Of a stretch of DNA of 64,000 nucleotides, positions 3,338 to 51,894 are shown one piece after another. The notes beneath the pieces are model-generated. The model saw only the letters and a list, made by a program, of their open reading frames with translations. It made no database searches and was not told the origin of the DNA. Origin of the DNA: Octopus bimaculoides (Eukaryota); NCBI RefSeq assembly GCF_001194135.2, contig NC_068984.1:60301634-60365633 (forward strand). The letters are read 5' to 3'. Numbering within the stretch: position 1 is the stretch's first letter; each line of letters opens with the position of its first letter. The translations under genes were made by a program, and so were the position numbers.

Positions 3338-3562
3338 GGCAGTAAGTAAGCTGGCAGAATTGTTAGGACACTGTGCAAAATACTTAGCAGCATTTCACCC
3401 GTCTTTATGTTCTGAGTTCAAATGCTGTCAAGGTTGACTTCACCTTGCAATCTTTCAGTGTCGATAAAATAAGCACCAGTTGAGCATTGAGGTTGATGTA
3501 ATCAACTTAACTCACTCTCCCCCAAAATTGTTGGCCTTGTGCCAAAATTCGAAATCAATGTT
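3338..3562 (+). mobile_element. tRNA-derived SINE, family B (working label)
   Basis: AGCTGGCAGAATTGTTAG...CTGAGTTCAAATG (A/B-box-like), body AAGCACCAGTTGAGCATTG, tail GGCCTTGTGCC. About 10 similar copies in the window. Confidence 0.85.
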
Positions 3563-3714: not shown

Positions 3715-4290
3715 AGAATCATCATCATCATCATTATCATCATTTAACGTCCGCCTTCCATGCTAGCATGGGTTGGACGACTTGACTGAGGACTGGTGAA
3801 ACCGGATGGCAACACCAGGCTCCAATCTAAATTTGGCAATGTTTCTACAGCTGGATGCCCTTCCTAACGCCAACCACTCAGAGAGTGTAGTAGGTGCTTT
3901 TACGTGTCACCTGCACGAAGGCCAGTCAGGCGATACTGGCAACGGCCACGCTCGAAATGGTGTCTTTTATGTGCCACCCGCACAAGCCAATCCACTGGCA
4001 ACGATCTCGCTCGAAAATCCTATGGGAGAAAAGTCAGGCGGTACTGACAACGGCCACGCTCAGAATGGTGCATCTTATGTGTCACCCGCACAAGAGCCAG
4101 TCCAGGGGCACTGGCAACGATCTTACTTGGCTTGCCGGGTCTTCTCATGCACAGCACATTTCCAAAGGTCTTGGTCAGTAGTCATCGCCTCGGTGATGCC
4201 CAATGTACGAAGGTCTTGCCTCACCACCTCAGCCCAGGTCTTCCTGGGCCTACCTCTTCCACGGGTTCCCTCAACTGTTAGGGTGTGGCA
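3715..4290 (-). mobile_element. 5'-truncated RTE-clade LINE (ORF C-terminus, long 3'UTR, (GAT)n tail)
   Basis: Minus strand encodes HTLTVEGTRGRGRPRKTWAEVVRQDLRTLGITEAMTTDQDLWKCAVHEKTRQAK*, with the GRPRKTW motif typical of RTE ORF ends. It is followed by a UTR and a GATGAT tail. Confidence 0.85.
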
Positions 4291-5360: not shown

Positions 5361-6067
5361 TCTGCTGTTTTCTTATTTTTCTGAAGTCCTTTTTTTCTTT
5401 TGTTTTTGATCTGTAACATGAGAGAAAAAAAAAGCAAAAAAAAAAAAAGCTCAAAAGCCTCCCAGACATCTAATTAATTGCAAAATTTGAATATTCTGTT
5501 AAATAGTTAGGATAGCGGGAAACTAAGTTTCAAGAATCTTTTATATAGCTGGATGCCTGCAGAAAATGTATTAAACTAAGTAGTCTGCTGTGGCACCACA
5601 TAGCGTTGTTATTGTGCACACCTGTAGAAAACAAATTGTGTAAATAAATATGATTATATTTAGAGTTGCATTTTGTTAGAGTTAAAACTAAATGATATGA
5701 GGGTTTTTTTTTTTAATATTTTCTGAAATCATTTTCTATTTTATAAGATTTAAATTGGCTTGTACATATGTTCTTACAATATAAGTGTGTTTGTACATGT
5801 GTCTGTTTGTATATTGGTACACATATGTGTGTGGATGTGTGTTCGTGCATGTCTGTATATTGATACATCTGTGTGTGCGTGTGTCTGTGTTTGTGCGCGC
5901 ATTTGTATATTGATACATGTGTGTGTGTTTGTATATACATCTGTATATTAGTACATGAGTGTGTGTGTGTGTTTGTACATGCATTTGTATATTGGTACGT
6001 GTGTGCATATGTGTGTGTAGACAAATATCAGGCTTTAGATTTTCTAACTTACATCTTTTTTCCTTAT

Positions 6068-6437
6068 TTTTGTACTTGTTTCGGTCATTAGACTGTGGCC
6101 ATGCTGGAGTACCGCCTTGAAGAATTTGTATTTTTTGCCTTTGAAGCTTGACACTTATTCTATTGGTCTTTCTTGCTGAACTGCTAAGTTACAGCAACGT
6201 AAGCACATCAACACATGGTGCTGGGGGACAAACACAGATGTAAGAATACACTTACATACACACACATAGTCACACATACATATACAATGAGCTTCTTTCA
6301 GTTTTCCTCAATCAAATCCATTCACAAGGCTTTGGTTGGGCTATTGGTCTCTTTTTTCCTGAACTGCTAAGTTACAAGGACATAGACACACCAACACTAA
6401 TTGTCAAATGGTGCTGGGGGACAAACACAGGTATAAG

Positions 6438-6517
<80 letters not shown>

Positions 6518-7365
6518 NNNNNNNNNNNNNNNNNNNNNNNNNNNNNNNNNNNNNNNNNNNNNNNNNNNNNNNNNNNNNNNNNNNNNNNNNNNNNNNNNNN
6601 NNNNNNNNNNNNNNNNNNNNNNNNNNNNNNNNNNNNNNNNNNNNNNNNNNNNNNNNNNNNNNNNNNNNNNNNNNNNNNNNNNNNNNNNNNNNNNNNNNNN
6701 NNNNNNNNNNNNNNNNNNNNNNNNNNNNNNNNNNNNNNNNNNNNNNNNNNNNNNNNNNNNNNNNNNNNNNNNNNNNNNNNNNNNNNNNNNNNNNNNNNNN
6801 NNNNNNNNNNNNNNNNNNNNNNNNNNNNNNNNNNNNNNNNNNNNNNNNNNNNNNNNNNNNNNNNNNNNNNNNNNNNNNNNNNNNNNNNNNNNNNNNNNNN
6901 NNNNNNNNNNNNNNNNNNNNNNNNNNNNNNNNNNNNNNNNNNNNNNNNNNNNNNNNNNNNNNNNNNNNNNNNNNNNNNNNNNNNNNNNNNNNNNNNNNNN
7001 NNNNNNNNNNNNNNNNNNNNNNNNNNNNNNNNNNNNNNNNNNNNNNNNNNNNNNNNNNNNNNNNNNNNNNNNNNNNNNNNNNNNNNNNNNNNNNNNNNNN
7101 NNNNNNNNNNNNNNNNNNNNNNNNNNNNNNNNNNNNNNNNNNNNNNNNNNNNNNNNNNNNNNNNNNNNNNNNNNNNNNNNNNNNNNNNNNNNNNNNNNNN
7201 NNNNNNNNNNNNNNNNNNNNNNNNNNNNNNNNNNNNNNNNNNNNNNNNNNNNNNNNNNNNNNNNNNNNNNNNNNNNNNNNNNNNNNNNNNNNNNNNNNNN
7301 NNNNNNNNNNNNNNNNNNNNNNNNNNNNNNNNNNNNNNNNNNNNNNNNNNNNNNNNNNNNNNNNN

Positions 7366-7411
<46 letters not shown>

Positions 7412-7565
7412 GGACTTCCATACAGTTTGTGTCTCCTGAATTCACTCAAGGCATTGGTTGGCTTGGGGCTATAGTAGAAGTCACTTGCTCAAGGTGCTAT
7501 GTAGTGGGACTGAACCTGAAACCACATGGTTGCAAAGTGGGTTTCTTACCCACACAACTATGTCT
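6068..7565 (-). mobile_element. SINE family A, with a duplicated or nested segment and an expanded internal (CA)n spanning an assembly gap
   Basis: Tail at 6068-6117, body twice (6160-6340 and 6341-6440), (CA)n from 6438 across the gap to 7390, head ending near 7565. Confidence 0.75.
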
Positions 7566-7671
7566 CTCAGACAAGAATATTTCTAATACCTAAATAGTAT
7601 ATTTCTGTATTTGGTTTACTTAACCATTTTTGCATTCAGATTTCTCTGTCAAATGTTATGCTTATTTATCC

Positions 7672-8015
7672 AGGGTGCATAGCTCAATAGTTAGAGCATT
7701 GGGCTCACAATCATGAAGTAGTGAGTTCGATTCCTGGATCGGGCTATGTGTTCTTCAGCAAGACACTTTATTTCACATTGCTCCAGTTCACTCAGCTGTA
7801 GAAATGAGTTGCGATGTCACTGGTGCCAAGCTGTATTGGCCTTTGCTTTTCCTTTGGATGACATCGGTGGTATGGAGAGTGGGGGGCTGGTATGCATGGG
7901 CGACTGCTGGTCTTCTATAAACAACCTTGCCCAGGCTTGTGCCTCAGAGAGGAACTTTCTAGGTGCAATCCCTTGGTCATTCATGACTGAAGGGAGTCTT
8001 TACCCTTTTTTACCC
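7672..8015 (+). mobile_element. tRNA-derived SINE, family E (working label)
   Basis: A-box TAGCTCAATAGTTAGAGC (7680-7697) and B-box GTTCGATTCC (7725-7734), followed by about 280 bp of non-tRNA body. Confidence 0.85.
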
Positions 8016-8017
8016 TG

Positions 8018-8165
8018 TAACCTTGAGATTTCAGTGATGTGTTTCTTTTTTTTTTTCAGACTCACATTGTAGGGTAGGTGTGAGATGCTGGATCTGGCCA
8101 GTTTGAACACAAAACAAATGAAATGAGTTTGATATTATAGCTGGTGTGAAATACTGAAGGGTTAA
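8018..8165. mobile_element. piggyBac-like MITE fragment
   Basis: Ends AAGGGTTAA. Contains TGTAGGGTAGGTGTGAGA..GGATCTGGCCAGTTTGAAC, the reverse complement of the 30627-30853 family. Confidence 0.6.
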
Positions 8166-8730
8166 CATGCAGTTTAGTTCTTTGGAGGTGATTCCTGCCA
8201 CAAGAAAGAAAGGTCTACAATCATTTTCATTTGTTTCATTCCCTACCTCCCCCAACTCCATCTTATTTAGTCTTGTGGCCAGCAAACAATGGCTAAACTG
8301 TCACCAACATATGAGCTTTTAAGCTTGCAGCCTGTGACTACTCACATTCTTCTCTTAAAATTGGCTGACAAAGGTAAGTGACAGTGTAGCTTGTATAAAA
8401 AAAAAAGCAAAAAAACAAAACAAAAACAAAACAAACAAAAACAAAGCAAAACAAAATAAAACTGTGCTACGTTCTGATATTGTAATGAATAATGCATTTA
8501 TTTATGTTGTATAATATTTTCTATGGGGTTCTAAAACTATGTTATTTCAACATTATTTAGAGAAATGTGAAAGCTGTACATTTTCTAGCTTATAGTTAAT
8601 TTATTATTGAACACTTCCTCCCTGCACACCTTGACGAAATTGTTAAAGCTTAGTCTCTTCCAGACATCATAAAATAAATATAGACACGGCCAAACTCCAA
8701 AAACGAATACAATATATGTCTATGTATGTA

Positions 8731-10018
8731 TTGAGTCATCCCATAAATAATGCGGTTTTTGTATACTACTACTTTTATTTTTTTAAATTAAGATAAAGAA
8801 AGTTCTTTTTTCATCTAAAATATACTCTCCATCATTTTCTACAATGCTCCTCCATCTATTTGGTAGACTTGCAAGGCCCTCTTCCAAAATTCACTTATCT
8901 GCGATGAAAAATATTCCTCCAGTACTGTTCTGACCTCATCTACAGAATTCATATTTTTTCCGTCCAAATGATTTCAAAGACTGCAGCATAAATGATAATC
9001 AGATGGGGCAATGTCTGGCGAATATAGTAGGTGGGGCATCGTTTCCTATTCAAATTGCTCCAGTCTTTGGAATTTCATCCTTGCTGTATGTGGCTGAGCA
9101 TTATCCTGATGGAAGAACACCTTTTGTCTTGAAACCAAAGATGGTTGTTTTTCTTCTAGCACTGACTTAAGCCACTCAAGCTGCTTGCAGTAGATCTCGT
9201 CTGTTATCATTTGGTTTAGGTTTAAAAGTTCAAAGTGGACTAGATATTTCATATCCCATCAAACAGATAACAACACTTTATGTGGGTGAAGACCTTCCTT
9301 AGCCTGGGGTGCTGGTATTTCTCCTTTCCCTACCCACTGTCTTCAGCACTTAACATTTTTATAGAGAACCCATTTCTCGTCACCACTCACTATTTGGTCC
9401 AAAACAGGTTCATTTGTGAGACATAATAGCAAAGAAGAGTATACATTCACCCTCTGCATGCAATTAGACTTGGAAAGTTTATGAGGAACCCATTGACCTA
9501 ATTTGCTGACTTTTCTGATGGTATGCAGGTGTCGATGAATGGTTGAATGACCAAATCCAAGCTTCTCTGCTAGTTCCTCAACAGTTATGATGGGATTTTG
9601 TTCCTGCAGGTTTTGCAGGACATCCTCCTCGAGCTCTACAGATCTTCCAGGATGAGGTTCATATTCTAGGCTGTAGTTTCCAGCCCGGAATTTCTGGAAC
9701 TACCATTGACACAGGCTTATGCTTACCATCCGATCGTCATATATTGCATCAATATTCCTTGCACTTTCTGTTGGGTTGTTGCCTTTATTGAACTCATGAA
9801 GTAAAATATGCCAAACATGCTCCTTTGTCACTTCTATTATAGCTTCGAAAAAATAGCTGTTAAAATCGAACTTCACTCTTCAAACTTGCACCAAGAATAA
9901 GGGTGAAGTAAAATTACTACCTACTTTTATAGCAAGTTGATGCAAGTAGTTTATCCCATCCCCTTCTGACTTTAAGTTCATGCAATTGAAAAACTGCATT
10001 ATTTATTGGATGACTTAA
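8731..10018 (-). mobile_element. Full-length (1288 bp) decayed mariner transposon, DD34D type
   Basis: TIRs TTGAGTCATCCCATAAATAATGCGGTTTT and AAAACTGCATTATTTATTGGATGACTTAA with TA on both sides. Minus strand shows GDEKWVLY, HQDNAQPH and YSPDIAPSDY, with stops and frameshifts. Confidence 0.95.
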
Positions 10019-10199
10019 TATATGCCTGTGTTTATCCATCTCTTTTTCTTTTCTCCTCCAGTCCCTCTCTTCCTCCTCCTCTCATGTATTTGTGTGTGTG
10101 TATGTATGAATCTATCTATCTGTCTGTCTCTCTGCTTTCTTTCTTGCCTGTGAGTGATGGCTGGCTTTACATGTATATTTGTTTAATATCCTTTCTATT

Positions 10200-10360
10200 A
10201 TAGACACAAGGTCTGAAATCTTGTGGGAGGAGACTAGTCTATTACATCAACCCCAGTGCTCAACTGGCACTCATTTCATTGAGCAAAGTTGACCTCTGGA
10301 ATTTGAACTCAGGACAGAATGCTTGATGAAATGCTGCTAAGCTTTTTGTCCATCATGCTA
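10200..10360 (-). mobile_element. SINE family B, degenerate
   Basis: CACAAGGTCTGAAA...CCCCAGTGCTCAACTGG...GGAATTTGAACTCAG. Confidence 0.7.
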
Positions 10361-11362
10361 TAACAGATGACAAACAATAGAATCACTAATTGCAGGTTCT
10401 TTAGTAGGCCAATTACTGGTTCACATACACCTTGATACTAAAGCGTCTAGGGAGTGTTTGTATCTCGGTGTGGAGCAAAAATCACAAGGGACTTCTAGAA
10501 GCAATATTTACATTCTTTTACATCAGGAAAAGACACAACATGTATTCACAAACATGCAGACGTGTGGGTGTGTGTGTGTGTGTGGGTGTGTGTATAAAAG
10601 CATATATGTGTAAGAAAAATACTCAGTTGTTCAACAACTAAGACAGTTAATGGTTATTGCATCAATATTCTACTTCTTCCCTATTAATTTTCTCTTTTCC
10701 TTCTTTGGCCCTCAACTCTTTTCTTTCTCCCTTACATTTTTCTTTCTACATACCATAATGAATCATCATAAATAATTAATATTTTACTGTTTATTTGTTA
10801 TTGTTCTTTTAATCATTACGTTTTTGCTTCAATTTTATTTCACTTTACAGGTTTTTGCTCACATGTGATGTTTTGAATTTTAATTTGTCTTTTTGTCTTT
10901 TTTTTTTTTCTCTCAGCTTCCATTGCTAAGTTTTATGTGACAACAAGCTGTGTTTTCTATTTTTTTTTTTTTGTTATAGCACTTCTTGTACTCTCCTTAG
11001 GCTGCAAAGTTGTTGTTGTTGTTGTTGTTGTTCTTCTTCTTCTTCTTCTTCAATGCAAATGTTAGAAAATCACATTGCATAACCTCCTAGCTTGTACGTA
11101 TACATCCTACCCACATCTACATATTCATCGCATTTCCGCAACCATCAACAGTTTTGGAGAATATAGAACTTAAAGAGCAAAGAAACACACCACACACACA
11201 CACACACACATGGCAAGAAAATAAGGAAAAAAAAAACAAAATGAAAACCTCAATAAATATATAAGTAATCAAAAATACATGAATATATATGTATATGAAT
11301 GAATGAATTATTGTGGAATATTGCATAATCACTTCCAGACAACCATCAGCAAATTATCTCTC

Positions 11363-13361: not shown

Positions 13362-13575
13362 TGGTGAGCTGGCAGAATTGTTAGCACTCTGGGCAAAATG
13401 CTTAGTAGTATTTCATCCATCTTTAGGTTCTGAGTTCAAATTCTGCCATGGTTTATTTTTCTTTTTGTCCTTTCAGGGTTGATAAAATAAGTACAAGTCG
13501 AGTACTGGGATCACTATAAACAATTTACTCCTTACCCCAAAACTGCTGGCCTTGTGCCAAAATTTGAAATCAATG
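13362..13575 (+). mobile_element. SINE family B
   Basis: GGTGAGCTGGCAGAATTGTTAGCAC...CTGAGTTCAAATTCTGCC...GGCCTTGTGCC. Confidence 0.85.
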
Positions 13576-24776: not shown

Positions 24777-24924
<148 letters not shown>

Positions 24925-34019: not shown

Positions 34020-35562
34020 TTGGGTTGGCAAGAAAGTAATTTTGTTTTTTTTGTGTGAAATAAAAGTCATCTTTTTCATGTAAAGAATGAACTTTAATCA
34101 ATTATATATTTTCCACTTTGTTTGATGACCTTTTGCCATCTTTCTGGCAACTTGATGATTCCACGCTCATAGAACTTCTGGTCCTTATCAGCCAAAAACT
34201 GAAGCAAGTGTGATTTCAGATCATCATCATTATTGAAAGTTTTACCATTCAAAGAATTTTGCAAACTTTGAAATAAATAGTAATCTGATGGTGCAAGGTC
34301 AGGGCTATATGGTGGATGTGACATCACTTCCCAAGCTCCAGTACTTTTTCATGAGTTAACAAAGATGTGTGTGGTCTAGCATTGTCATGGTGGAACATGA
34401 TTCCTTTACAATTTGCTGATTCTGGCCGTTTTTCTTTGATTGCTTCCTCCAGTTTCATTAGTTCTTGACAGTAAACAGCTGAATTGATTGTTTGGTTCTT
34501 TGGAAGCAGCTCAAAATACACAACACCTTTGTAATCCCACCAAATTAACATCATGATCTTTTTTGATGCAATTCAGCTTTTGATGTGGTTTGTGCTGGTT
34601 CATTACGTTTGGGCCATGATTGTTTTTGATTGATGTAATTGTAGACCAGTGGTTCCTAAATTTTTTTGGGCTGCCACCCCCTTGACACCCAGGCCACATT
34701 CCCACCGCCCCCACCCCAACTAACCATTACAAACATAGACATCTTTCCAAAGCAAATTCAAAGCAACTGTATTTCACAAATAAAACGTAACCTAATGAAC
34801 CCATTATTTTGTGTTTTTACATGAATTGCCACCTCATTATTGCCCCAATTTTTACATGAATTGCTACCCCATCATCGCCCCACTTTTCTTCAATGACCCC
34901 TTGGAACTTTCCACTGCCCCCAGGGGGTGCAATACTGCCCACATTGAGAACCACTGCTTTAGACAATCCATTTTTCATTACCAGTGATAATTTGTTTTAA
35001 AAGAAGGTCAATTTCATTGTGTTTGTGATGCATATCACAAATATTGATTTGTTATGTTAAATGAATCTCTTTCAATTTATATGGAACCTAAATATTGAAC
35101 TTCTTAACAAGTCCAAGACATTTTAAGTGATTTCCGATTGTTGCTTGTGATACATTGAACTTCTCTACAATGTGTCGCTCAGTTATATAATAATCATATT
35201 CAATTATGGCTTTAAGTTGGTCATGATCAACTTCAATAGGTTGACCAGAATGTTGGTCATCTTTGAGCGAAAAATCTCCAGAACAGAATTTATTACATAT
35301 CTTTTTGTGAGCCTCAGCAGCTTTCATGCCGTTACAGAAATAAGAAAGCAAAATATGCTGAAAATGTTTGTTTTTGCACTCCATGTTAAAATTGAAACTG
35401 AACTAACAGCTGTAAACAAAATTTTTTACAATTTGCTTCTAAAGTAAGCTAAAAGTAACAGCTATCAAATGTCAAAAGGAAAAAAATCATAACATTGACA
35501 AAAGTCATTCAAAAGTCGTAACTCTATTTGTGAAAAACGAAATTACTTTTTTACCAGTCCAA
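34020..35562 (-). mobile_element. Decayed mariner transposon (Hsmar1/cecropia-like TIRs), interrupted by a hAT MITE
   Basis: TIRs TTGGGTTGGCAAGAAAGTAATTTTG and CGAAATTACTTTTTTACCAGTCCAA. Motifs TGNEKWIV (first D replaced by N), HHDNARPH and HPPYSPDLAPSDYYLF. The N-terminal HTH region is ORF 35088-35384. Confidence 0.95.
34647..34956. mobile_element. hAT (Charlie-like) MITE nested in the mariner
   Basis: TIRs CAGTGGTTCCTAA and TTGAGAACCACTG. Imperfect 8-bp TSD TTGTAGAC / CTTTAGAC. Confidence 0.85.
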
Positions 35563-41919: not shown

Positions 41920-42145
41920 ACAAGGCAGTGAGCTTGCAGAAGAGTTAGCACACCAGGCAAAATGCTTAGTGACTTTTCATCTGTCTTTTAAGTACAGAGT
42001 TCAAATTCTGCTGAGGTTGACTTTTGCCTTTCATCCTTTCAAGGTCGATGAAATAAGATACTAGTTGAACTCCAGGGTTGATGTAATTGACTGAGCCCCC
42101 CCCCCCCGAAATTGCTGGCCCTGTGCCAAAATTTGAAACCAATAT
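41920..42145 (+). mobile_element. SINE family B
   Basis: Complete head, body and tail. Confidence 0.85.
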
Positions 42146-43481: not shown

Positions 43482-43569
<88 letters not shown>

Positions 43570-43591
43570 TACTACTACTACTACTACTATC

Positions 43592-45430
43592 AATATCTGG
43601 CAGCTGTTGTCATCACACCTGGTTTCGGTCTGGGTTTTTCATAGTTGGATCACTGCCATGTACAGTGACATCTGCTCGGTAGTCTGGGTGAATGGTCACC
43701 TATCAGAACCATTCAACATCGTGTGTTTGGTCCATCAATGGTGCCCACTCTTGTCCATTTTGTATGTACTAACCCTTGAGCCATTACTTCGGAAACTGGA
43801 GTTGTTGAGAGGCATCTTGCGTGAACTAAGATGTGGGAGAGTTGTGTTGGCATATGCAGACGATGTCACCATCATAGTGATGGATGATGAGCACATAGAC
43901 CTGGTCAGCTCTACTGTGAAAGAATACGAGGAAGTAACAGGAGATACAGATTAATCTGGTAAAGTCAGTGAACCTGCAGCTTGGCACCTGGAGAGGCAGA
44001 TACATGCTGACTGACAGCATTGTAGGACATTGGACGGTTGGGCCTGTAAAATTGTTTGGGGTCTGGTTCGGACTGGATCTCCAACTGGAGAAGAACTGGA
44101 GTGAGGTGATAAGCAGGGTAGCCATTCTCACCCAAAAAATGGGCCGAGAGGAAGCTATTCTTGAAAGGTCAGGCAGAGCTGATGAACACATATATTGCTT
44201 CAGTCTTTTACTACTGACTCACTGTTGTGCCTTGCTCCAATTTGTACCTAGTCAAGCTGGAGTATTTGCTTTTCTGCTTCTTGTGGAAATGATGGACTTC
44301 ATTGGTCAGGCACTCCATTTGCTGTCAATACCCTATGAACGGTGGGCTGAGTACGCCATCGCTATTGACGCACAGACAGCACATCCAGTGTTTCCTCAAC
44401 AATGGTGGGTAGGTGTGGTTACCATTTGTCAGACTTGTTTTTCCATAGCTTGTCTCTTTGAGTGAGCTACAATCTTGGATCAAACAGAGACCAATGTTGG
44501 GTGTCTGGCACCTTGAGTATCACCAGATGCTCATGCTTAGCCAGTCGTGCAATGTGGTTAGTGGAAGTTCTACTATGGCATTGTATAGAAGGTTAGTGGT
44601 GAAAGGAAATGACAACGTTCTTGGAGAGACTCTAGGTGTTGATGAATTTCAACTCGCCAGTCTGTTCCAGAGGACTTTTGGGCTGGGATAACTTCCAGAA
44701 ATCCATTGCCTGGCAGTGCTACAGGAGATTTTTGCCTGTTTGAGATAAACTCTACAGGCATGGAAGTGCTGTCAGTTGGACCTGCCTGAGATGTGCGCAG
44801 TGATGAAACCTGAGCATATCTGATATATGGGTTTATGTTGAACACCTGTTGTCATGTGTAGGATGTGTTTGCTTGTTGGCTGATTCCATCATGAAGATTG
44901 CCCCACTGCCTTACTTTGGCCGGCAAGGGGAGGCAGTTTTCATCTGTATTGTAGCGAAAGAAGTTGTGTGGTGGTCTAGACTGAAAGGGCTGAAGATAAA
45001 TACTTTTCTCTTTGGCCTACCCCTCATTAACTTTTTCAGATACTATCTGAAAAGGAATGTGAGGGTTGAGAGAGAACTGGTGACTTTCAGCAATTTTATT
45101 AAAAGGTGGGTGAATGTCGTGAAGATGGTCTGTGTCAAAGGGCCTACTTTGAGCATGCAGTTTTGAGTTTCCAAGGCTGACAAAGAGAGAAAGAAGGGGA
45201 GAAGGCTGTTGCCCTAGTGGTCATAGCCCTTGTGGATTTTTCGTGGGATCTCTATGAGTAGCCCAGAATTGCTTGCCTCTTTTAGGCATTCTCTTTGTTA
45301 TAGTTTTCATTGTTATTAACTTTTTACACAACACTTTATGTAACCCCACTTTGTTCTTCATGTTTTGTAATGTCCAGTCTTATTTTTGTTGGCCCTTGTG
45401 GCTAATAAAGAAAGGATTATTATTATTATC
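43592..45430 (+). mobile_element. 5'-truncated Tx1/L1-clade LINE, decayed (RT domain to 3' end)
   Basis: VNGHLSEPF...PLLSILYVLTLEPLLRKL...LAYADDVT (RT YADD), VKLFGVWFG, a C-terminal TCLRC..ET.EH zinc knuckle, and terminus GGCCCTTGTGGCTAATAAAGAAAGG followed by (ATT)n. Confidence 0.9.
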
Positions 45431-45849
45431 ATCATTATTCTTATTATTAAACAATAAGAAGAGCGTGACTGTTACTGGTAATAAATAAAGATTGACTCTG
45501 TTTATTAAAATGAAAATGAAATGAATGAACAATATTTTGACACTTCGTGTTAGGAAATGCTGAAACTGAATTTCATTTCAGTGTTTCCTAATTTTGAATG
45601 TTTCGGTGTTTCCTATCTTTGAATTTCACTTCATTTCATATTTCGAATTTTTAAAAGACACACAGAGTGTCGAAATATTGTCCATTCCTTTCATTTTCAT
45701 TTTAATGAACAGAGTCAATCTCTATTTATTATCAATAACAGTTGTGCTCTTCTTATTGTTTCTTTACCTTTGTGAAGAGTAACTTCAATCTTGAAATATT
45801 ATTATTATTATTATTATTCTTATTCTTCTTCTTCTTCTTCTTCTTCTTC

Positions 45850-45886
<37 letters not shown>

Positions 45887-45902
45887 TACTACTACTACTA
45901 CT

Positions 45903-46125
45903 AAGGCAGCAAGCTGGCAGAATTGTTAGTATATTGGGCAAAATGCTTTGCAGCATTTCGTTTGTCCTAGCATTTTGAGTTCAAATTCCACCGAGATTGA
46001 ATTTGCCTTTCATCCTTTTGGGGTTGATAACTTAAATAGCAGTCACACACTGGGGTTAGTGTAATCAACTAGTCTACTCCCCTAAAATTTCAGGCCTTGT
46101 GCCTATAGTAGAAAGGATTGTTGTT
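45903..46125 (+). mobile_element. SINE family B inserted after (ATT)n(ACT)n
   Basis: Full copy with tail GGCCTTGTGCCTATAGTAGAAAGGATT. Confidence 0.9.
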
Positions 46126-46136
46126 ATTATTTTTAT

Positions 46137-46735
46137 TATTGAGTGAGATAGTAATGCATGTCACCAAAGTGACACTGGGGTACAACTATACAAAACCCAG
46201 TATACCCATCATGACTACCCATCTGATAAGGGTCCTCAGACACATGCATCACAACCATATATGCGCAACATGGTGATCTCATATTAAGATAAACAGTGCA
46301 TAACCTTGCAGGTAGGGCCCAGTTAGGATTTTCTTTGAATAACCCATCCCTCTCAAAAGGTCCTTGAATAAAGTTTAAAAATGATGAATGAAATACCCAT
46401 GTTTCCAGGGTTGAATTATTCAAGCCCTAAAGAATTCCTCCCAACAAATGGCTATGATGCCCCCCCCCCCCNNNNNNNNNNNNNNNNNNNNNNNNNNNNN
46501 NNCCCCCCCCGACTACTTTTGCTTGTTATCAGAGATGCACATATCATCAGCCACTAAGGGAGATGCTCAACTGGTTAAGGTCAAACAACTGACAAGCAAA
46601 TCTGTGGCATTGAGCAGAATATTTGCTATAGCCCTTTTTTTATACCAAGACAAAACATGTACATGATAACACTTCCAATCAATTAAAATCAGAAGCCATG
46701 AGAGCCACTCACTGGTACTGCATCAGGGCATTTAT
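46137..46735. mobile_element. About 600-bp non-coding interspersed element flanked by ATT/CAT simple repeats
   Basis: The internal part (CCCTAAAGAAT...GATCAGAGATGCACATAT...GGTTAAGGTCAAACAACTGACAAGCAAATCTGTGG) recurs at about 52940-53113. Confidence 0.7.
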
Positions 46736-46759
46736 CATCATTATATGTTTGGCTTTTGC

Positions 46760-47668
46760 TTTGTGTTTGTACAAATGGACTACAAGTCTCATGCAGATCC
46801 CCCAAGAGATAACAAGTTAGAAGTTCAAGTTGGTATTATGATTAGGGTACCATATTTTTAGCTTCGCATAGGGTATTGTTCTAGAGAGTGTCTGTCAAAA
46901 CAAAAGGAAATTAAATGTTTGCTTTAAAAGTAATTTGATGATAAGATGATAATGTGATCTGAAGATGACAGTTAATGTGTTTGCTATTAAGTACATTTAA
47001 AAGTACTTTTGATAATGTTCTACAATTAAGATGTTTTGGGAATTACACTGACAATATTTTTCTTAGGATATGAGCAGTTCCCATCAGCACTATTTTAAAA
47101 ATATCTTCCATTTTTGGATTTCCTGGTATCTGAGATAGGGAACAATCAACTCCTTTTGCAATCATCCCTAGGGCACTTATGACAACAGGCATTGTTCTAG
47201 TCTTGAGATTCCACATTTTGCCAATTTCTATTTCAAGATCTTTATATTTGCTCATTTTTTGGTAGCTCTTGACTGGGATAGTCATATTGATGAGAAGTCA
47301 TGATTTTTGTCTGAAATCCTTCAGTATAATAGCTGACCTATTTGCATCTATCTTTCTGTCAGTTTGAACAGTAATGATCCAAAGGAATGAGATGTGATCA
47401 TTTTCAAGTACTGAAGTTGATTTGGATTCCCACCAGTTTTTATTATAGGAGAGGTCCAGGTCCTTGCAGATTACCCCATGAATATGATGTTCTGTGCTAT
47501 TGAGATGCCCTTCGAGATACTCTGTGGGCACAAGAAGGCTGCACATACAGACAATATGATCAAAGGTTTCTGCTTGTTGTTTACATACATTGGGCTACTG
47601 CCATTCTTTTATAAGTTGGCCTGGTAGCTTCTTGTAGACAGGCATTGATCTTGGGCTGCTCTGATAAA
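46760..47668 (-). mobile_element. R4/Dong-like (RLE-type) LINE, 5'-truncated
   Basis: GFIRAAQDQCLSTRSYQ, a decayed CCHC region ending CSLLVPTEYL, then ILW/TDRKIDANR..II.KD and KMSKYKDLEIEIGKMW..PVVISALG..IVLMGTAHILRKILS*. Confidence 0.9.
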
Positions 47669-47669
47669 C

Positions 47670-47736
47670 CCTTATTATTATTATCACCACCACCACCACC
47701 ACCACCACCACCACCACCACCATCACCACCACCACC

Positions 47737-47790
<54 letters not shown>
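47670..47790. repeat. (ATT)n-(CAC)n-(CAT)n array
   Basis: Directly visible. Confidence 0.95.
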
Positions 47791-47791
<1 letters not shown>

Positions 47792-48190
47792 AGGTGGTGA
47801 GCTGGCAGAATCATTAGCACACTGGGCAAAATGCTTAGCAGTATTTCGCCTGTTACTTTGTTCTAAGTTCAAACTCTGCCAAGGTTGACTTTGCCTTTCA
47901 TCCTTTTTGGGGGTTGATAAATCAAGTACCAGTGAAACACTGGGGCCAATGTAATCGACTAGCTCCCTCCTCTCAAATTTCAGGCCTTGTGCCTTTAATA
48001 GAAAGAATTATTAAATTTCGTCTGTTGCTACATTCTGGGTTCAAATTCTACTGAGGTTGACTTTGCTTTTCATTCTTGCAAGGTCAATAAATTAAGTACC
48101 AGTGAAACACTGAGGTCAATGTAATCAACTAGTCCCCATCCCCAAGATTTCAGGCCTTGTGCCTTTAGTAGAAAGAATTATTATTATTAC
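47790..48190 (+). mobile_element. Two tandem SINE family B copies (second lacks the 5' start)
   Basis: Both end GGCCTTGTGCCTTTA.TAGAAAGAATTATT. Confidence 0.85.
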
Positions 48191-50181: not shown

Positions 50182-50550
50182 ATCATCATCGTCATTTAAT
50201 GTCTGCTTTCCATGTTGGCATGGGTTGGATGGTTCAATTGAGAACTCGCAAGTTGGGAGGCTGCACCAGGCTGGTTTAGCAAGGTTTCTACAGCTGGATG
50301 CCCTTCCTAATGCCAACCACTCCCAGAGTGTAGTGGGTGCTTTTATGTGCCAGTCAGCTGGCACTAGCATCAGTCACACTCGAATGGTGCTTTTTACATG
50401 CCACTGGAATGGGTGCCAGTCAGGCAGCACTGGCATTGGCCATGCTCGAATGGTGCATTTTACATGCCACTGGTACAGGTGCCAGTCAAGTGGCACTGGC
50501 TTCAGCCACGCTTGAATGGTGCATTTTACATGACACCAGCATGGGTGCCA
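50182..50550 (-). mobile_element. RTE LINE 3'UTR fragment with a 66-bp tandem array
   Basis: Same UTR as 3715-3900, followed by about 3 units of ATGCCACTGG...GAATGGTGCATTTTAC. Confidence 0.85.
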
Positions 50551-50553
50551 GTG

Positions 50554-51686: not shown

Positions 51687-51894
51687 CCTTGTGGAGTTGA
51701 TGATAAAATAAGCACCAGTCGAACATTTTGTTCTGAGTTAAAATTCCGCTGGGGTCAACTTTGCCATTTATCCTTTCAGGGTCGATAAATTAAGTTTTCT
51801 GGCCTTCTGCCTATTGTAGAAAGGGTTATTATCACCACCACCACCACGATCACCACTGCCGCCACCACTGCCACCAAAAACCACCACCACCATC

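What the first reader, a model, noticed from the sequence alone, without database searches (positions are those of the whole stretch)
45391..46125. Probable SINE-LINE pair: SINE-B shares its 3' terminus with a Tx1/L1-clade LINE, and both sit in (ATT)n arrays
Seen: the Tx1-like LINE ends GGCCCTTGTGGCTAATAAAGAAAGG(ATT)n at 45391-45430. SINE-B copies end GGCC-TTGTGCCTATAGTAGAAAGG(ATT)n (about 46093-46120, and similarly near 47985, 48150 and 53357). The young variant at 57479 ends AGCCCCTTGTGGGCAATAAAGAAA, closer still to the LINE. The LINE (5' flank 43484-43590) and the SINE at 45903 are both preceded by (ATT)n then (ACT)n, and the copies at 51964 and 53357-53570 also abut (ATT)n. Known: SINEs often borrow the 3' end of their partner LINE, and some Tx1-clade families target microsatellites (Kibi TC, Koshi TTC). 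Inference: an (ATT)n-preferring Tx1 family mobilises this tRNA SINE. That is an uncommon partner clade and may be undescribed in cephalopods. The shared sequence is only about 30 bp.
Basis: partly seen in the sequence, partly recalled or inferred. Interest (0 to 1): 0.7.

Follow-up and report, generated by a model that had tools for sequence, protein, structure and literature searches.

The report
Octopod SINEs share an L1/Tx1-like LINE tail
A dead copy of an L1/Tx1-type jumping gene and the short SINE repeats around it end in the same small RNA hairpin, so this LINE lineage probably copies the SINEs that fill octopus genomes; this is a new example of a well-known parasite-of-a-parasite arrangement.

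Summary
The 5'-truncated LINE at 43589-45449 ends GGCC-CTTGT-GGCT, then AATAAAGAAAGG, then (ATT)n. Every SINE subfamily in the window ends in the same module.

- **More than chance:** all 8 perfect 4-bp-stem/CTTGT-loop hairpins in the window lie at SINE or LINE 3' ends, against 0.26 expected.
- **Stem covaries:** GGCC/GGCY, GACC/GGTC, GCCC/GGGC, AGGC/GCCT, AGAC/GTCT and TGGC/GCCA all keep pairing.
- **Integral to the LINE:** divergent relatives, including a near-full-length Argonauta hians element (ORF1 with CCHC knuckle, APE endonuclease, RT, zf-RVT), carry the module at the end of an alignable 3' UTR.
- **SINE-only profile finds LINE ends:** the window LINE end scores E = 9e-7. The young SINE tail matches the Argonauta LINE over 44 nt (86%).

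So a stringent-type SINE-LINE partnership with an L1-group, Tx1-like LINE is well supported, and is broader than SINE-B alone. Tx1 subclade membership was not tested by phylogeny.

(ATT)n is first of all the LINE's own tail. ATT-tailed copies do sit inside ATT-type arrays. Other copies insert at ordinary sites with TSDs, so strict microsatellite specificity is not shown. No prior description was found.

The parts
43484..43588 (+). (ATT)28 then (ACT)7 directly 5' of the truncated LINE. Probable remnant of the targeted array.
   Evidence: The LINE sequence starts at ATCAATATCTGG (43589). The L002 relative reads GACTATATCAATATCT at the matching position, so there may be ACT microhomology at the junction.
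43589..45415 (+). 5'-truncated, decayed L1/Tx1-like LINE: the RT thumb and C-terminal zf-RVT region of ORF2 (remnants 43634-45163, stop at 45164-45166) and the 3' UTR (45167-45415).
   Evidence: tblastn and stitched translation give 55-62% aa identity to P0003, P0006 and P0007. There are about 7 stops and 3 frameshifts. The only PDB matches are human L1 ORF2p.
45391..45403 (+). Terminal hairpin of the LINE: GGCC / CTTGT / GGCT. In this copy it extends to a 12-bp stem through the U-rich and A-rich flanks.
   Evidence: Fold of 45361-45428: -19.1 kcal/mol, z = -3.9.
45404..45449 (+). A-rich spacer AATAAAGAAAGG, then the degenerate (ATT)n tail.
   Evidence: The L007 LINE, the near-full-length L004 LINE and the L004 3' fragment have the same spacer and tail.
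45798..45902 (+). Compound array (ATT)7 CTT ATT (CTT)9 (ATT)11 (ACT)6, 5' of SINE-B copy 1.
45903..46142 (+). SINE-B copy 1. Full length; hairpin AGGC/CTTGT/GCCT at 46092-46104; tail ATT GTT GTT ATT ATT TTT ATT ATT at 46117-46142.
47791..48014 (+). SINE-B copy 2. Preceded by (ACC)n(ATC)n at 47686-47790; hairpin at 47982-47994; short tail ATTATTAA.
48015..48190 (+). SINE-B copy 3. 5'-truncated and inserted head-to-tail on the tail of copy 2; hairpin at 48152-48164; (ATT)4 tail.
51700..51963 (+). Partial SINE-B with hairpin remnant TGGC/CTTCT/GCCT at 51800-51812, then the array (ATT)2 (ACC)n ... (ATC)n (ATT)20.
51964..52100 (+). Internally deleted SINE copy whose head abuts the (ATT)20 array.
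53299..53605 (-). SINE-B copy 4 (53572-53359). Hairpin remnant AGAC/CTTGT/GCCT at 53383-53371; (ATT)20 tail at 53358-53299; 5' array (ATC/ATT)n at 53605-53573.
10190..10375 (-). SINE-B copy 5. Rearranged 5' part; hairpin AGAC/CTTGT/GTCT (a compensated G-C to A-U change) at 10214-10202; no ATT array.
3339..3559 (+). SINE-A copy. Hairpin TGGC/CTTGT/GCCA at 3532-3544; ends GAAATCAAT; TSD TTGTGTTAA; no ATT tail.
13363..13574 (+). SINE-A copy. Hairpin at 13547-13559.
41922..42143 (+). SINE-A copy. Loop mutated to CCTGT.
57462..57713 (-). Young SINE copy (57697-57478), rich in CpG. Hairpin GCCC/CTTGT/GGGC at 57503-57491; ends AATAAAGAAATAA; perfect 16-bp TSDs.

Best explanation
The finding is the 3' end of a dead, 5'-truncated LINE of the L1 group. 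Its relatives have Tx1-like architecture: ORF1 with a CCHC knuckle, and ORF2 with an APE endonuclease, RT and a C-terminal zf-RVT zinc finger.

The LINE RNA ends in a compact module:
- a short G+C hairpin with the conserved loop CUUGU;
- an A-rich spacer containing GAAA;
- an (AUU)n tail.

The pol III-type SINEs of this genome are one family with at least three tail subfamilies (A, B and young). They carry the same module at their 3' ends, and so do at least two SINE families of Argonauta.

Proposed mechanism (inferred, by analogy with stringent LINE-SINE pairs):
1. The LINE ORF2 protein recognises the hairpin module on SINE RNA in trans.
2. It nicks AT-rich DNA.
3. It primes reverse transcription on the terminal repeat.

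Where the RNA carries an (AUU)n tail, as in the LINE and SINE-B, the tail can pair with (AAT)n on the nicked strand. New copies then land in existing ATT arrays and lengthen them. The result is same-orientation nests such as 43.5-48.2 kb.

Shown here: the shared module, its covariation, its integral position in the LINE 3' UTR, the L1-group domain set, and the flank pattern.

Inferred: recognition in trans, priming on the tail, and the tail-to-target pairing preference.
For: 1. Module enrichment. All 8 of 8 perfect stem/CTTGT/stem hairpins in the window lie at SINE or LINE 3' ends, against 0.26 expected.

2. Structure.
- On 27 aligned tails, 92.6% of cells pair, against 73% in shuffles and 17-50% when partners are slid.
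- 3 of 4 pairs show changes on both sides; the covariation score is 0.50 against 0.15.
- RNAalifold predicts the same helix independently.
- The hairpin appears in 7 of 8 single-sequence minimum-energy folds.

3. The module belongs to the LINE. The 3' UTRs of five LINE members align continuously from the stop codon to the hairpin. These are the window copy, L007, the near-full-length L004 LINE, the L004 3' fragment and L001.
- L007 ends GGGCCCTTGTGGCCAATAAAAGAAATC(ATT)>=24.
- The near-full-length Argonauta LINE ends GCCCTTGTGGCTAATAAAAGAAATA(ATT)4.

4. A profile built from SINE tails only, without microsatellite columns, was searched over 122 kb on both strands.
- Window LINE end: E = 8.7e-7.
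- Near-full-length Argonauta LINE end: E = 7.9e-5.
- L007 end: E = 3.4e-3.

5. The best non-self match of the young SINE tail is the Argonauta LINE terminus: 86% over 44 nt, E = 6e-8.

6. L1 group.
- The window RT fragment hits only human L1 ORF2p in the PDB.
- The Argonauta relative has Exo_endo_phos, RVT_1 and zf-RVT domains.
- It aligns colinearly with L1 ORF2p residues 5-524 (E = 1e-12) and 567-882 (E = 6e-22), against 1e-13 for R2.
- Its ORF1 carries CHRCGLPGHIRSGC. Type-I ORF1 in animal L1-like elements is described as consistent with Tx1 (PMC5203782).
- L1-Tx1 is the only L1-like group among the recently active O. vulgaris LINEs listed in PMC13282606.

7. Tail orientation. SINE-B and the LINE both carry sense-strand (ATT)n.

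8. Flanks. 6 of 7 ATT-tailed copies are preceded by ATT-type arrays or by another element's tail. 0 of 4 non-ATT-tailed copies are.

9. Precedents. Tx1-Mar mobilising SINEU and microsatellite-targeting Tx1 families (PMC4494074). Microsatellite tails linked to the choice of priming site (PMC6007223).
Against: - Only one LINE copy lies in the window, and it is decayed. The source organisms of L007 and L001 are unknown.
- The helix is only 4 bp. In most single-sequence folds the energy is no better than for shuffles.
- The aligned tails are related by descent, so covariation cell counts overstate the number of independent events.
- Outside the hairpin, SINE-B matches the window LINE modestly: 11 of 15 positions after the stem. 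A different LINE subfamily may be its true partner.
- One Argonauta LINE subfamily (L009) keeps the stem but has the loop AGGT.
- The Tx1 subclade was not tested by phylogeny, and cluster look-ups gave no informative names.
- Other octopod LINE clades (RTE, CR1, Dong/R4) could not be surveyed for similar tails.
- No test of overlapping activity periods was possible. Only a crude comparison could be made: SINE-B copies are 85-90% identical to a 5-copy consensus, and the LINE carries about 7 stops in 1.5 kb.
- The tRNA origin of the SINE head was not detected by ARAGORN or Rfam.
Confidence: 0.75

Rival explanations
1. The (ATT)n arrays are only the elements' own tails, expanded by slippage, together with the general microsatellite richness of an AT-rich genome. 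There is no target preference for (ATT)n. The partnership holds but the microsatellite-targeting part does not.
For: - (ATT)n is the conserved tail of four LINE copies from three sources, with lengths from 4 to at least 24 units.
- In 43 kb of Argonauta DNA, both (ATT)>=4 arrays are LINE tails.
- The near-full-length Argonauta LINE has an ordinary short TSD, TATACA.
- SINE-A and the young SINE insert at unique sites.
- Independent ATT arrays exist without any element end nearby, at 24782 and 42893.
Against: - In the window, 6 of 7 ATT-tailed copies have an ATT-type array or another tail directly at their 5' end. Such arrays cover only about 1% of the window.
- Elements form same-orientation chains in the window and in L004 4500-11205.
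Confidence: 0.35
2. SINE-B is mobilised by a different LINE that uses (TAA)n/(ATT)n. Candidates are the RLE-type, Dong/R4-like LINE seen on the minus strand at 46143-47680, or an RTE. The resemblance to the L1/Tx1-like tail would then be inherited from an older SINE ancestor.
For: - An RLE-like LINE fragment flanked by (AAT)n in its own sense shares the microsatellite at 46118-46142 with a SINE-B tail.
- Dong-R4 is the group with the most recent insertions in O. vulgaris (PMC13282606).
- Outside the hairpin, SINE-B is only modestly similar to the window LINE.
Against: - The sense-strand tail of SINE-B is (ATT)n, as in the L1/Tx1-like LINE. The RLE LINE ends in the complementary (AAT)n and has no stem/CTTGT/stem motif near its end.
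- The last 10 nt before the repeat, AGAAAGGATT, are identical in SINE-B copy 1 and the window LINE.
- The SINE-only profile finds no other LINE sequence in the 122 kb of window and fetched loci searched.
Confidence: 0.1
3. Artefact: the LINE-like tail at 45391-45430 is a severely 5'-truncated SINE copy that happens to lie next to the LINE. Alternatively, the similarity is chance in AT-rich sequence that includes an AATAAA signal.
For: - The shared stretch in the window pair is short. blastn gives E = 0.008, and that match includes ATT repeats.
- AATAAAGAAA is low-complexity sequence.
Against: - Five LINE members from independent loci and sources carry the motif at the end of a continuously alignable 3' UTR.
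- Hairpin enrichment is 8 observed against 0.26 expected.
- The profile and blast statistics are significant.
Confidence: 0.03

Closest known systems
Stringent-type LINE-SINE pairs with a shared 3' stem-loop and terminal short repeats (for example eel UnaL2/UnaSINE1; model of Ohshima et al. 1996 and Kajikawa & Okada 2002, as cited in PMC4824008)
   Same: - The SINE 3' end copies the LINE 3' end.
- A conserved stem-loop lies just upstream of a short tandem repeat on which reverse transcription would start.
- Several SINE families share one tail.
   Different: - The partner here belongs to the L1 group, not L2, CR1 or RTE.
- The stem is only about 4 bp, and the repeat is (AUU)n.
- Recognition has not been tested experimentally.
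Tx1-Mar LINEs and SINEU in crocodilians (Kojima 2015, PMC4494074)
   Same: - A Tx1-type LINE is inferred to mobilise SINEs.
- Shared insertion behaviour of LINE and SINE is part of the argument.
   Different: - That link rests on a shared target (Mariner-N4_AMi) and shared snRNA-derived 5' ends.
- Here the link is a shared 3' hairpin and tail, the heads are not snRNA-derived, and the target is at most a microsatellite preference.
Microsatellite-specific Tx1 families: Kibi (TC)n, Koshi (TTC)n, and crocodilian (TTCC)n/(TTTC)n families (Kojima & Fujiwara 2004 via PMC4494074)
   Same: - L1/Tx1-type element found inside a trinucleotide-type array with the repeat on both sides (window LINE).
   Different: - The repeat is also the element's own conserved tail.
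- The near-full-length Argonauta copy sits at a non-repeat site with a TSD, so strict specificity is not met.
Plant L1 lineage with a conserved, structured 3' end shared with maize and sorghum SINEs (Ohshima 2012, PMC3472496; review PMC3747384)
   Same: - An L1-clade LINE that is stringent rather than poly(A)-dependent, with SINEs copying its 3' end.
   Different: - Different kingdom and a different structure.
- Microsatellite tail rather than poly(A).
RTE-related retroposons whose 3' microsatellite correlates with the start of the TSD (Nishiyama & Ohshima 2018, PMC6007223)
   Same: - Tail repeat and priming or target site appear coupled.
   Different: - Different LINE clade.
- Here whole arrays, not single nucleotides, flank the copies.
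Octopus SINEs OR1, OR2 and OK (Ohshima & Okada 1994), annotated today as tRNA-Core or tRNA-Deu (PMC8967140)
   Same: - Probably the same kind of SINE body. It has a B-box-like GGTTCAAATTCC and a CORE-like middle segment.
   Different: - Identity with OR1/OR2 was not tested because no reference sequence was at hand.
- No partner LINE is assigned to them in the papers searched.

Membership tests
Stringent LINE-SINE partnership (shared 3' tail) | The SINE 3' terminus is homologous to the LINE 3' terminus. | tested here: met
   The SINE-only profile hits LINE ends at E = 8.7e-7, 7.9e-5 and 3.4e-3. The young SINE matches the Argonauta LINE at 86% over 44 nt.
Stringent LINE-SINE partnership (shared 3' tail) | The shared region is an integral part of the LINE 3' UTR, not an adjacent insertion. 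| tested here: met
   The 3' UTRs of 5 LINE members align from the stop codon to the hairpin.
Stringent LINE-SINE partnership (shared 3' tail) | A conserved stem-loop in the shared tail, supported by compensatory changes. | tested here: met
   92.6% of cells paired, and 3 of 4 pairs changed on both sides. Caveats: only 4 bp, and the sequences are related by descent.
Stringent LINE-SINE partnership (shared 3' tail) | The same terminal short repeat in LINE and SINE. | tested here: inconclusive
   Sense-strand (ATT)n is present in the LINE and in SINE-B. SINE-A, the young SINE and the Argonauta SINEs end in one or two ATT-like units only.
Stringent LINE-SINE partnership (shared 3' tail) | Overlapping periods of activity. 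| not tested
   This needs genome-wide copies. Only crude figures are available.
Stringent LINE-SINE partnership (shared 3' tail) | Trans-mobilisation shown in a retrotransposition assay. | not testable with these tools
   Requires an experiment.
L1 group of non-LTR retrotransposons | ORF2 with an N-terminal APE-type endonuclease, RT and a C-terminal Cys-rich domain; no RLE and no RNase H. | tested here: met
   Exo_endo_phos, RVT_1 and zf-RVT are found in the Argonauta relative. It is colinear with human L1 ORF2p. The window copy keeps only the RT and C-terminal parts.
Tx1 clade (within the L1 group) | The RT domain branches with Tx1 references in a phylogeny. | not tested
   No labelled reference sequences could be obtained. 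Cluster look-ups gave no informative names.
Tx1 clade (within the L1 group) | Type-I ORF1 (RRM plus CCHC knuckle) instead of Transposase_22. | tested here: inconclusive
   CHRCGLPGHIRSGC is present in the Argonauta ORF1. Pfam zf-CCHC reaches only E = 0.062, and there is no Transposase_22 hit. The RRM was not tested.
Microsatellite-specific Tx1 (Kibi/Koshi type) | Most copies are flanked on both sides by the same microsatellite. | tested here: inconclusive
   Window LINE: yes. Near-full-length Argonauta LINE: no, it has the TSD TATACA beside a SINE tail. Argonauta 3' fragment: its 5' flank is a SINE tail. Only three junctions were available.
tRNA-derived CORE-SINE | A tRNA-like head recognisable as a tRNA. 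| tested here: not met
   ARAGORN finds no genes. Rfam gives no tRNA match at E <= 1. Only a B-box-like GGTTCAAATTCC and an A-box-like TAGCAC..GGG are seen by eye.
tRNA-derived CORE-SINE | Presence of the CORE domain. | not tested
The literature labels the main octopus SINEs tRNA-Core or tRNA-Deu (PMC8967140).

The most novel reading that the evidence does not exclude
One L1/Tx1-like LINE lineage is the engine behind most of the octopod SINE expansion. It would be recognised through a minimal 13-nt hairpin (loop CUUGU) plus a GAAA spacer that many unrelated SINE heads have captured in Octopus-like and Argonauta genomes.

Its (AUU)n tails would also seed ATT microsatellite nests. These nests would then attract further ATT-tailed copies and (TAA)n-targeting RLE LINEs, giving self-reinforcing insertion hot spots.
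Probability: 0.35. Interest if true: 0.65.

Novelty: new member of a known kind. Interest (0 to 1): 0.5.

Why it matters
SINEs make up roughly a tenth of Octopus genomes and are the hallmark of the octopus repeat landscape (PMC13282606, PMC8967140). The papers searched name no autonomous partner for them. Work on active octopus LINEs has centred on RTE and Dong elements (PMC9115989).

A defined 3' recognition module shared with an L1/Tx1-like LINE makes three things possible:
- The question of which LINE drives the octopus SINE bursts becomes directly testable.
- SINE families now labelled "unclassified" could be grouped by tail.
- It adds one of the few cases of stringent, structure-dependent template choice inside the L1 group.

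Tried and rejected
- **Naming the clade through database names.** The two homologue searches aimed at clade names, a full-library HMMER search and one cluster look-up returned only "hypothetical protein"-type names. Tx1 and L1 proper could not be separated.
- **tRNA or other RNA family for the SINE head or tail.** ARAGORN and Rfam found nothing. The Rfam hits are low-complexity miRNA look-alikes below the gathering score.
- **More LINE 3' ends.** P0008 is not on record. L008 and L010 stop inside or before the terminal module. L005, L006 and L002 end within or just after the ORF.
- **Classifying the minus-strand RLE-like LINE at 46143-47680.** No Pfam or PDB match.
- **A longer conserved helix around the hairpin.** It is present in the window LINE (12 bp) and partly in the Argonauta 3' fragment. 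It is not conserved across members.
- **A negative control from another LINE 3' end in the window (61221-61493, minus strand).** The end is lost in an N gap.
- **Chance and adjacent-SINE-fragment explanations.** Rejected.
Full report
**What is there**

The window is AT-rich DNA (33% G+C) full of retroposons.

From 43589 to 45415 lies a single, 5'-truncated, decayed LINE on the plus strand. No second copy is in the window.
- Stitched translation shows the RT palm and thumb (LAYADDVTIIV), the region after the RT, and a CX2CX8HX4C zinc finger. The ORF ends ...GPTLSMQF* at 45164-45166.
- The 3' UTR (45167-45415) ends TTGTT-GGCC-CTTGT-GGCT-AATAAAGAAAGG.
- It is followed by (ATT)4 ATC ATC ATT ATT CTT ATT ATT A.

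The SINE copies belong to one family whose bodies are about 85% alike, with three tail subfamilies:

| Subfamily | Copies (window coordinates) | 3' end |
|---|---|---|
| A | 3339, 13363, 41922 | TGGCCTTGTGCCAAAATTTGAAATCAAT |
| B | 45903, 47791, 48015, about 51700, 53572 (minus), 10375 (minus) | AGGCCTTGTGCCTWTAGTAGAAAGRATT(ATT)n |
| Young | 57697-57478 (minus); CpG-rich, perfect 16-bp TSD | GCCCCTTGTGGGCAATAAAGAAATAA |

**Is it more than chance?**

I searched both strands for a 4-bp stem with at least two G-C pairs around the loop CTTGT.
- There are 8 such hairpins in the window. All 8 lie at the 3' end of a SINE or of the LINE.
- Block shuffles give 0.26 on average.

The stems differ between families yet stay paired:

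| Source | Stem |
|---|---|
| LINE copies | GGCC/GGCT or GGCC/GGCC |
| Argonauta LINE 3' fragment | GACC/GGTC |
| Young SINE | GCCC/GGGC |
| SINE-B | AGGC/GCCT |
| One SINE-B copy | AGAC/GTCT |
| SINE-A | TGGC/GCCA |

On an alignment of 27 tails:
- 92.6% of cells pair. Shuffled partners give 73%, and slid partners give 17-50%.
- Three of the four pairs show changes on both sides.
- RNAalifold predicts the same helix without being told.
- The hairpin appears in 7 of 8 single-sequence minimum-energy folds. In the window LINE it extends to a 12-bp stem (z = -3.9). In the others the energy is unremarkable.

Caveats: the helix is short, and the sequences are related by descent.

**Does the module belong to the LINE?**

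Homologue searches and contig look-ups brought in relatives.
- **L007.** A metagenome contig with an intact 574-aa ORF2 C-terminal part, 62% aa identity. It ends ...CGGGCCCTTGTGGCCAATAAAAGAAATC(ATT)>=24.
- **L004, near-full-length LINE.** An Argonauta hians chromosome contig holds a near-full-length element at about 5363-11205. It ends ...CGTCCCCTCTATGTTTTTGCCCTTGTGGCTAATAAAAGAAATA(ATT)4.
- **L004, 3' fragment.** A 130-bp LINE 3' fragment ends GGACCCTTGTGGTCAATAAAAGAATT(ATT)17.

The five 3' UTRs align continuously from the stop codon to the hairpin. This rules out the idea that the window's LINE tail is an adjacent SINE fragment.

A further Argonauta subfamily (L009) keeps the stem AGCC/GGCT and the AAGAAAGAAAT spacer but has the loop AGGT.

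**Do the SINE tails really match LINE tails?**

- In 43 kb of Argonauta DNA, many SINE copies of at least two families end TGTTCGGCCCTTGTGGCTAATAGAGAAATCTATTT. One family has a CORE-like body. The other is a short element starting CCGGCCGACAACAGCTCAATTGGTAGAGCG.
- A profile HMM built from SINE tails only was searched over 122 kb on both strands. It had no LINE rows and no microsatellite columns. It recovers the window LINE terminus at E = 8.7e-7, a better score than the window's own SINE copies get. It recovers the near-full-length Argonauta LINE terminus at 7.9e-5 and L007 at 3.4e-3.
- The best non-self match of the window's young SINE tail is the Argonauta LINE terminus: 86% over 44 nt, E = 6e-8. 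A 54-nt gapped match to L007 follows.

The shared part is therefore about 30 nt for SINE-B, including the identical AGAAAGGATT before the repeat. It is about 45 nt for the young subfamily.

**Which LINE clade?**

- The window fragment hits only human L1 ORF2p in the PDB.
- The Argonauta element has three ORF pieces:
  - ORF1 of 639 aa with a CCHC knuckle, and no Transposase_22 hit;
  - an ORF2 piece with an APE-type endonuclease (Exo_endo_phos, 5e-11);
  - an ORF2 piece with RVT_1 (2e-18) and zf-RVT (6e-8).
- The two ORF2 pieces align colinearly with L1 ORF2p residues 5-524 (1e-12) and 567-882 (6e-22). R2 proteins reach only 1e-13 on the RT core.

That places the element in the L1 group.

A type-I ORF1 in an animal L1-like element is described as consistent with Tx1 (PMC5203782). 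L1-Tx1 is the only L1-like group among the recently active O. vulgaris LINEs listed in PMC13282606. Even so, no labelled phylogeny could be made, and database names were uninformative. "Tx1-like" is therefore likely but untested.

**Target or tail?**

(ATT)n in the sense orientation is the conserved tail of the LINE lineage, with 4, 17 and at least 24 units in different copies. Both (ATT)>=4 arrays in the Argonauta loci are LINE tails.

In the window, the 5' ends of ATT-tailed copies almost always abut ATT-type arrays or another element's tail:

| Copy | What lies directly 5' |
|---|---|
| LINE | (ATT)28(ACT)7 |
| SINE-B 45903 | (ATT)11(ACT)6 |
| SINE-B 47791 | (ACC)n(ATC)n |
| SINE-B 48015 | tail of the preceding SINE-B |
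| SINE-B 53572 (minus) | (ATC/ATT)n |
| SINE at 51964 | (ATT)20 |

That is 6 of 7 ATT-tailed copies, in at least three separate nests. Such arrays cover about 1% of the window.

In contrast, SINE-A, the young SINE and the near-full-length Argonauta LINE (TSD TATACA, just after a SINE tail) sit at ordinary sites.

Same-orientation chains occur in both genomes. L004 4500-11205 holds six retroposons head-to-tail.

The simplest reading is that the tail repeat pairs with the nicked target, so ATT-tailed RNAs favour ATT arrays. A similar coupling has been proposed for RTE-related retroposons (PMC6007223). An endonuclease with strict (ATT)n specificity of the Kibi/Koshi kind (PMC4494074) is not shown. 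Orthologous empty sites would decide.

**A rival source of ATT arrays**

A LINE C-terminal fragment lies on the minus strand at 46143-47680. It has a CCHC and restriction-like-endonuclease-type motif.
- In its own sense it is flanked by (AAT)n on both sides. It shares the microsatellite 46118-46142 with a SINE-B tail.
- It may be a Dong/R4-like (TAA)n-targeting element, but it could not be classified.
- Its sense-strand tail is the complement of the SINE-B tail, and it lacks the hairpin. That argues against it as the SINE-B partner.

**Known or new?**

These are already established:
- shared SINE/LINE 3' tails and stringent recognition;
- Tx1-type LINEs mobilising SINEs (SINEU and Tx1-Mar);
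- microsatellite-targeting Tx1 families;
- a stringent plant L1 lineage (PMC4824008, PMC4494074, PMC3472496, PMC3747384).

Five full-text searches and the octopus repeat papers read name no partner LINE for octopus SINEs and describe no such module. Repbase and Dfam could not be consulted.

I therefore rate this as a new member of a known kind. It is of moderate interest because it points to the likely driver of the octopod SINE expansion.

Noticed in passing
window 46143-47680 (minus strand); second partial copy at 52930-53120 (plus strand): C-terminal fragment of another LINE. It has a C..C..ET..HI..C motif followed by a restriction-endonuclease-like region (ORF 47301-47594, minus strand). 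In its own sense it is flanked by (AAT)n on both sides and shares the microsatellite 46118-46142 with a SINE-B tail. It may be a Dong/R4-like (TAA)n-targeting element. No Pfam or PDB match.
   Followed up: partly
window 45450-45760: MITE-like 311-bp palindromic element with 15-bp terminal inverted repeats (AACAATAAGAAGAGC). It is inserted in the ATT tail of the LINE.
   Followed up: no
window 47686-47790, 51825-51963, 43484-43588, 45798-45902, 53720-53780: Compound trinucleotide arrays that change by single transitions along their length: (ACC)n(ATC)n, (ATT)2(ACC)n..(ATC)n(ATT)20, (ATT)n(ACT)n twice, and (GAC)n(GAT)n(AAT)n. All lie next to retroposon ends. Both the LINE and the SINE at 45903 are preceded by (ACT)6-7, and the only other (ACT)>=4 array is at 1108. 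The origin is unexplained.
   Followed up: partly
window 53600-53780 (plus strand); also near 3718, 4568, 21730 and 4940 in the opposite orientation: Another abundant retroposon family. Its end ...CCATGCTAGCATGGAAAGCGGACGTTAAAT is followed by (GAC)n(GAT)n-type repeats. This may be an RTE-style microsatellite tail. It has no stem/CTTGT/stem motif.
   Followed up: no
L004 4500-11205 (Argonauta hians, BAAFZT010000007.1): Six retroposons lie head-to-tail in one orientation: a CORE-like SINE, a LINE 3' fragment with (ATT)17, three tandem short SINEs, and a near-full-length L1/Tx1-like LINE. ORF1 of the LINE is open. ORF2 is split into two ORFs with a 92-nt gap between them (9099 to 9191).
   Followed up: partly
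L009 12255-12300 (Argonauta hians, BAAFZT010000001.1): A second LINE subfamily (P0190, 65% aa identity) ends CAGCCAGGTGGCTAAGAAAGAAATTTAATT. The stem AGCC/GGCT is kept, the loop is AGGT instead of CTTGT, and there is no clean ATT tail.
   Followed up: no
window 24782-24924: Palindromic microsatellite (ATT)17 AT (AAT)16 followed by (AAC)12, with no recognisable element end beside it.
   Followed up: no
window 9346-9699 (minus strand) and 35091-35402 (minus strand): ORF fragments that look like the N-terminal helix-turn-helix part of mariner-type transposases.
   Followed up: no
window 61221-61493 (minus strand); N gap at about 60793-60973: C-terminal ORF of a further LINE (...LCWTGHLIRMKNSRIPKQMLYGEL...). 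Its 3' end is lost in an assembly gap. The window holds 4696 N in all, including 46473-46503.
   Followed up: no
window 50347-50552: Tandem repeat with a 66-bp unit, 3.1 copies, inside another abundant octopod repeat.
   Followed up: no
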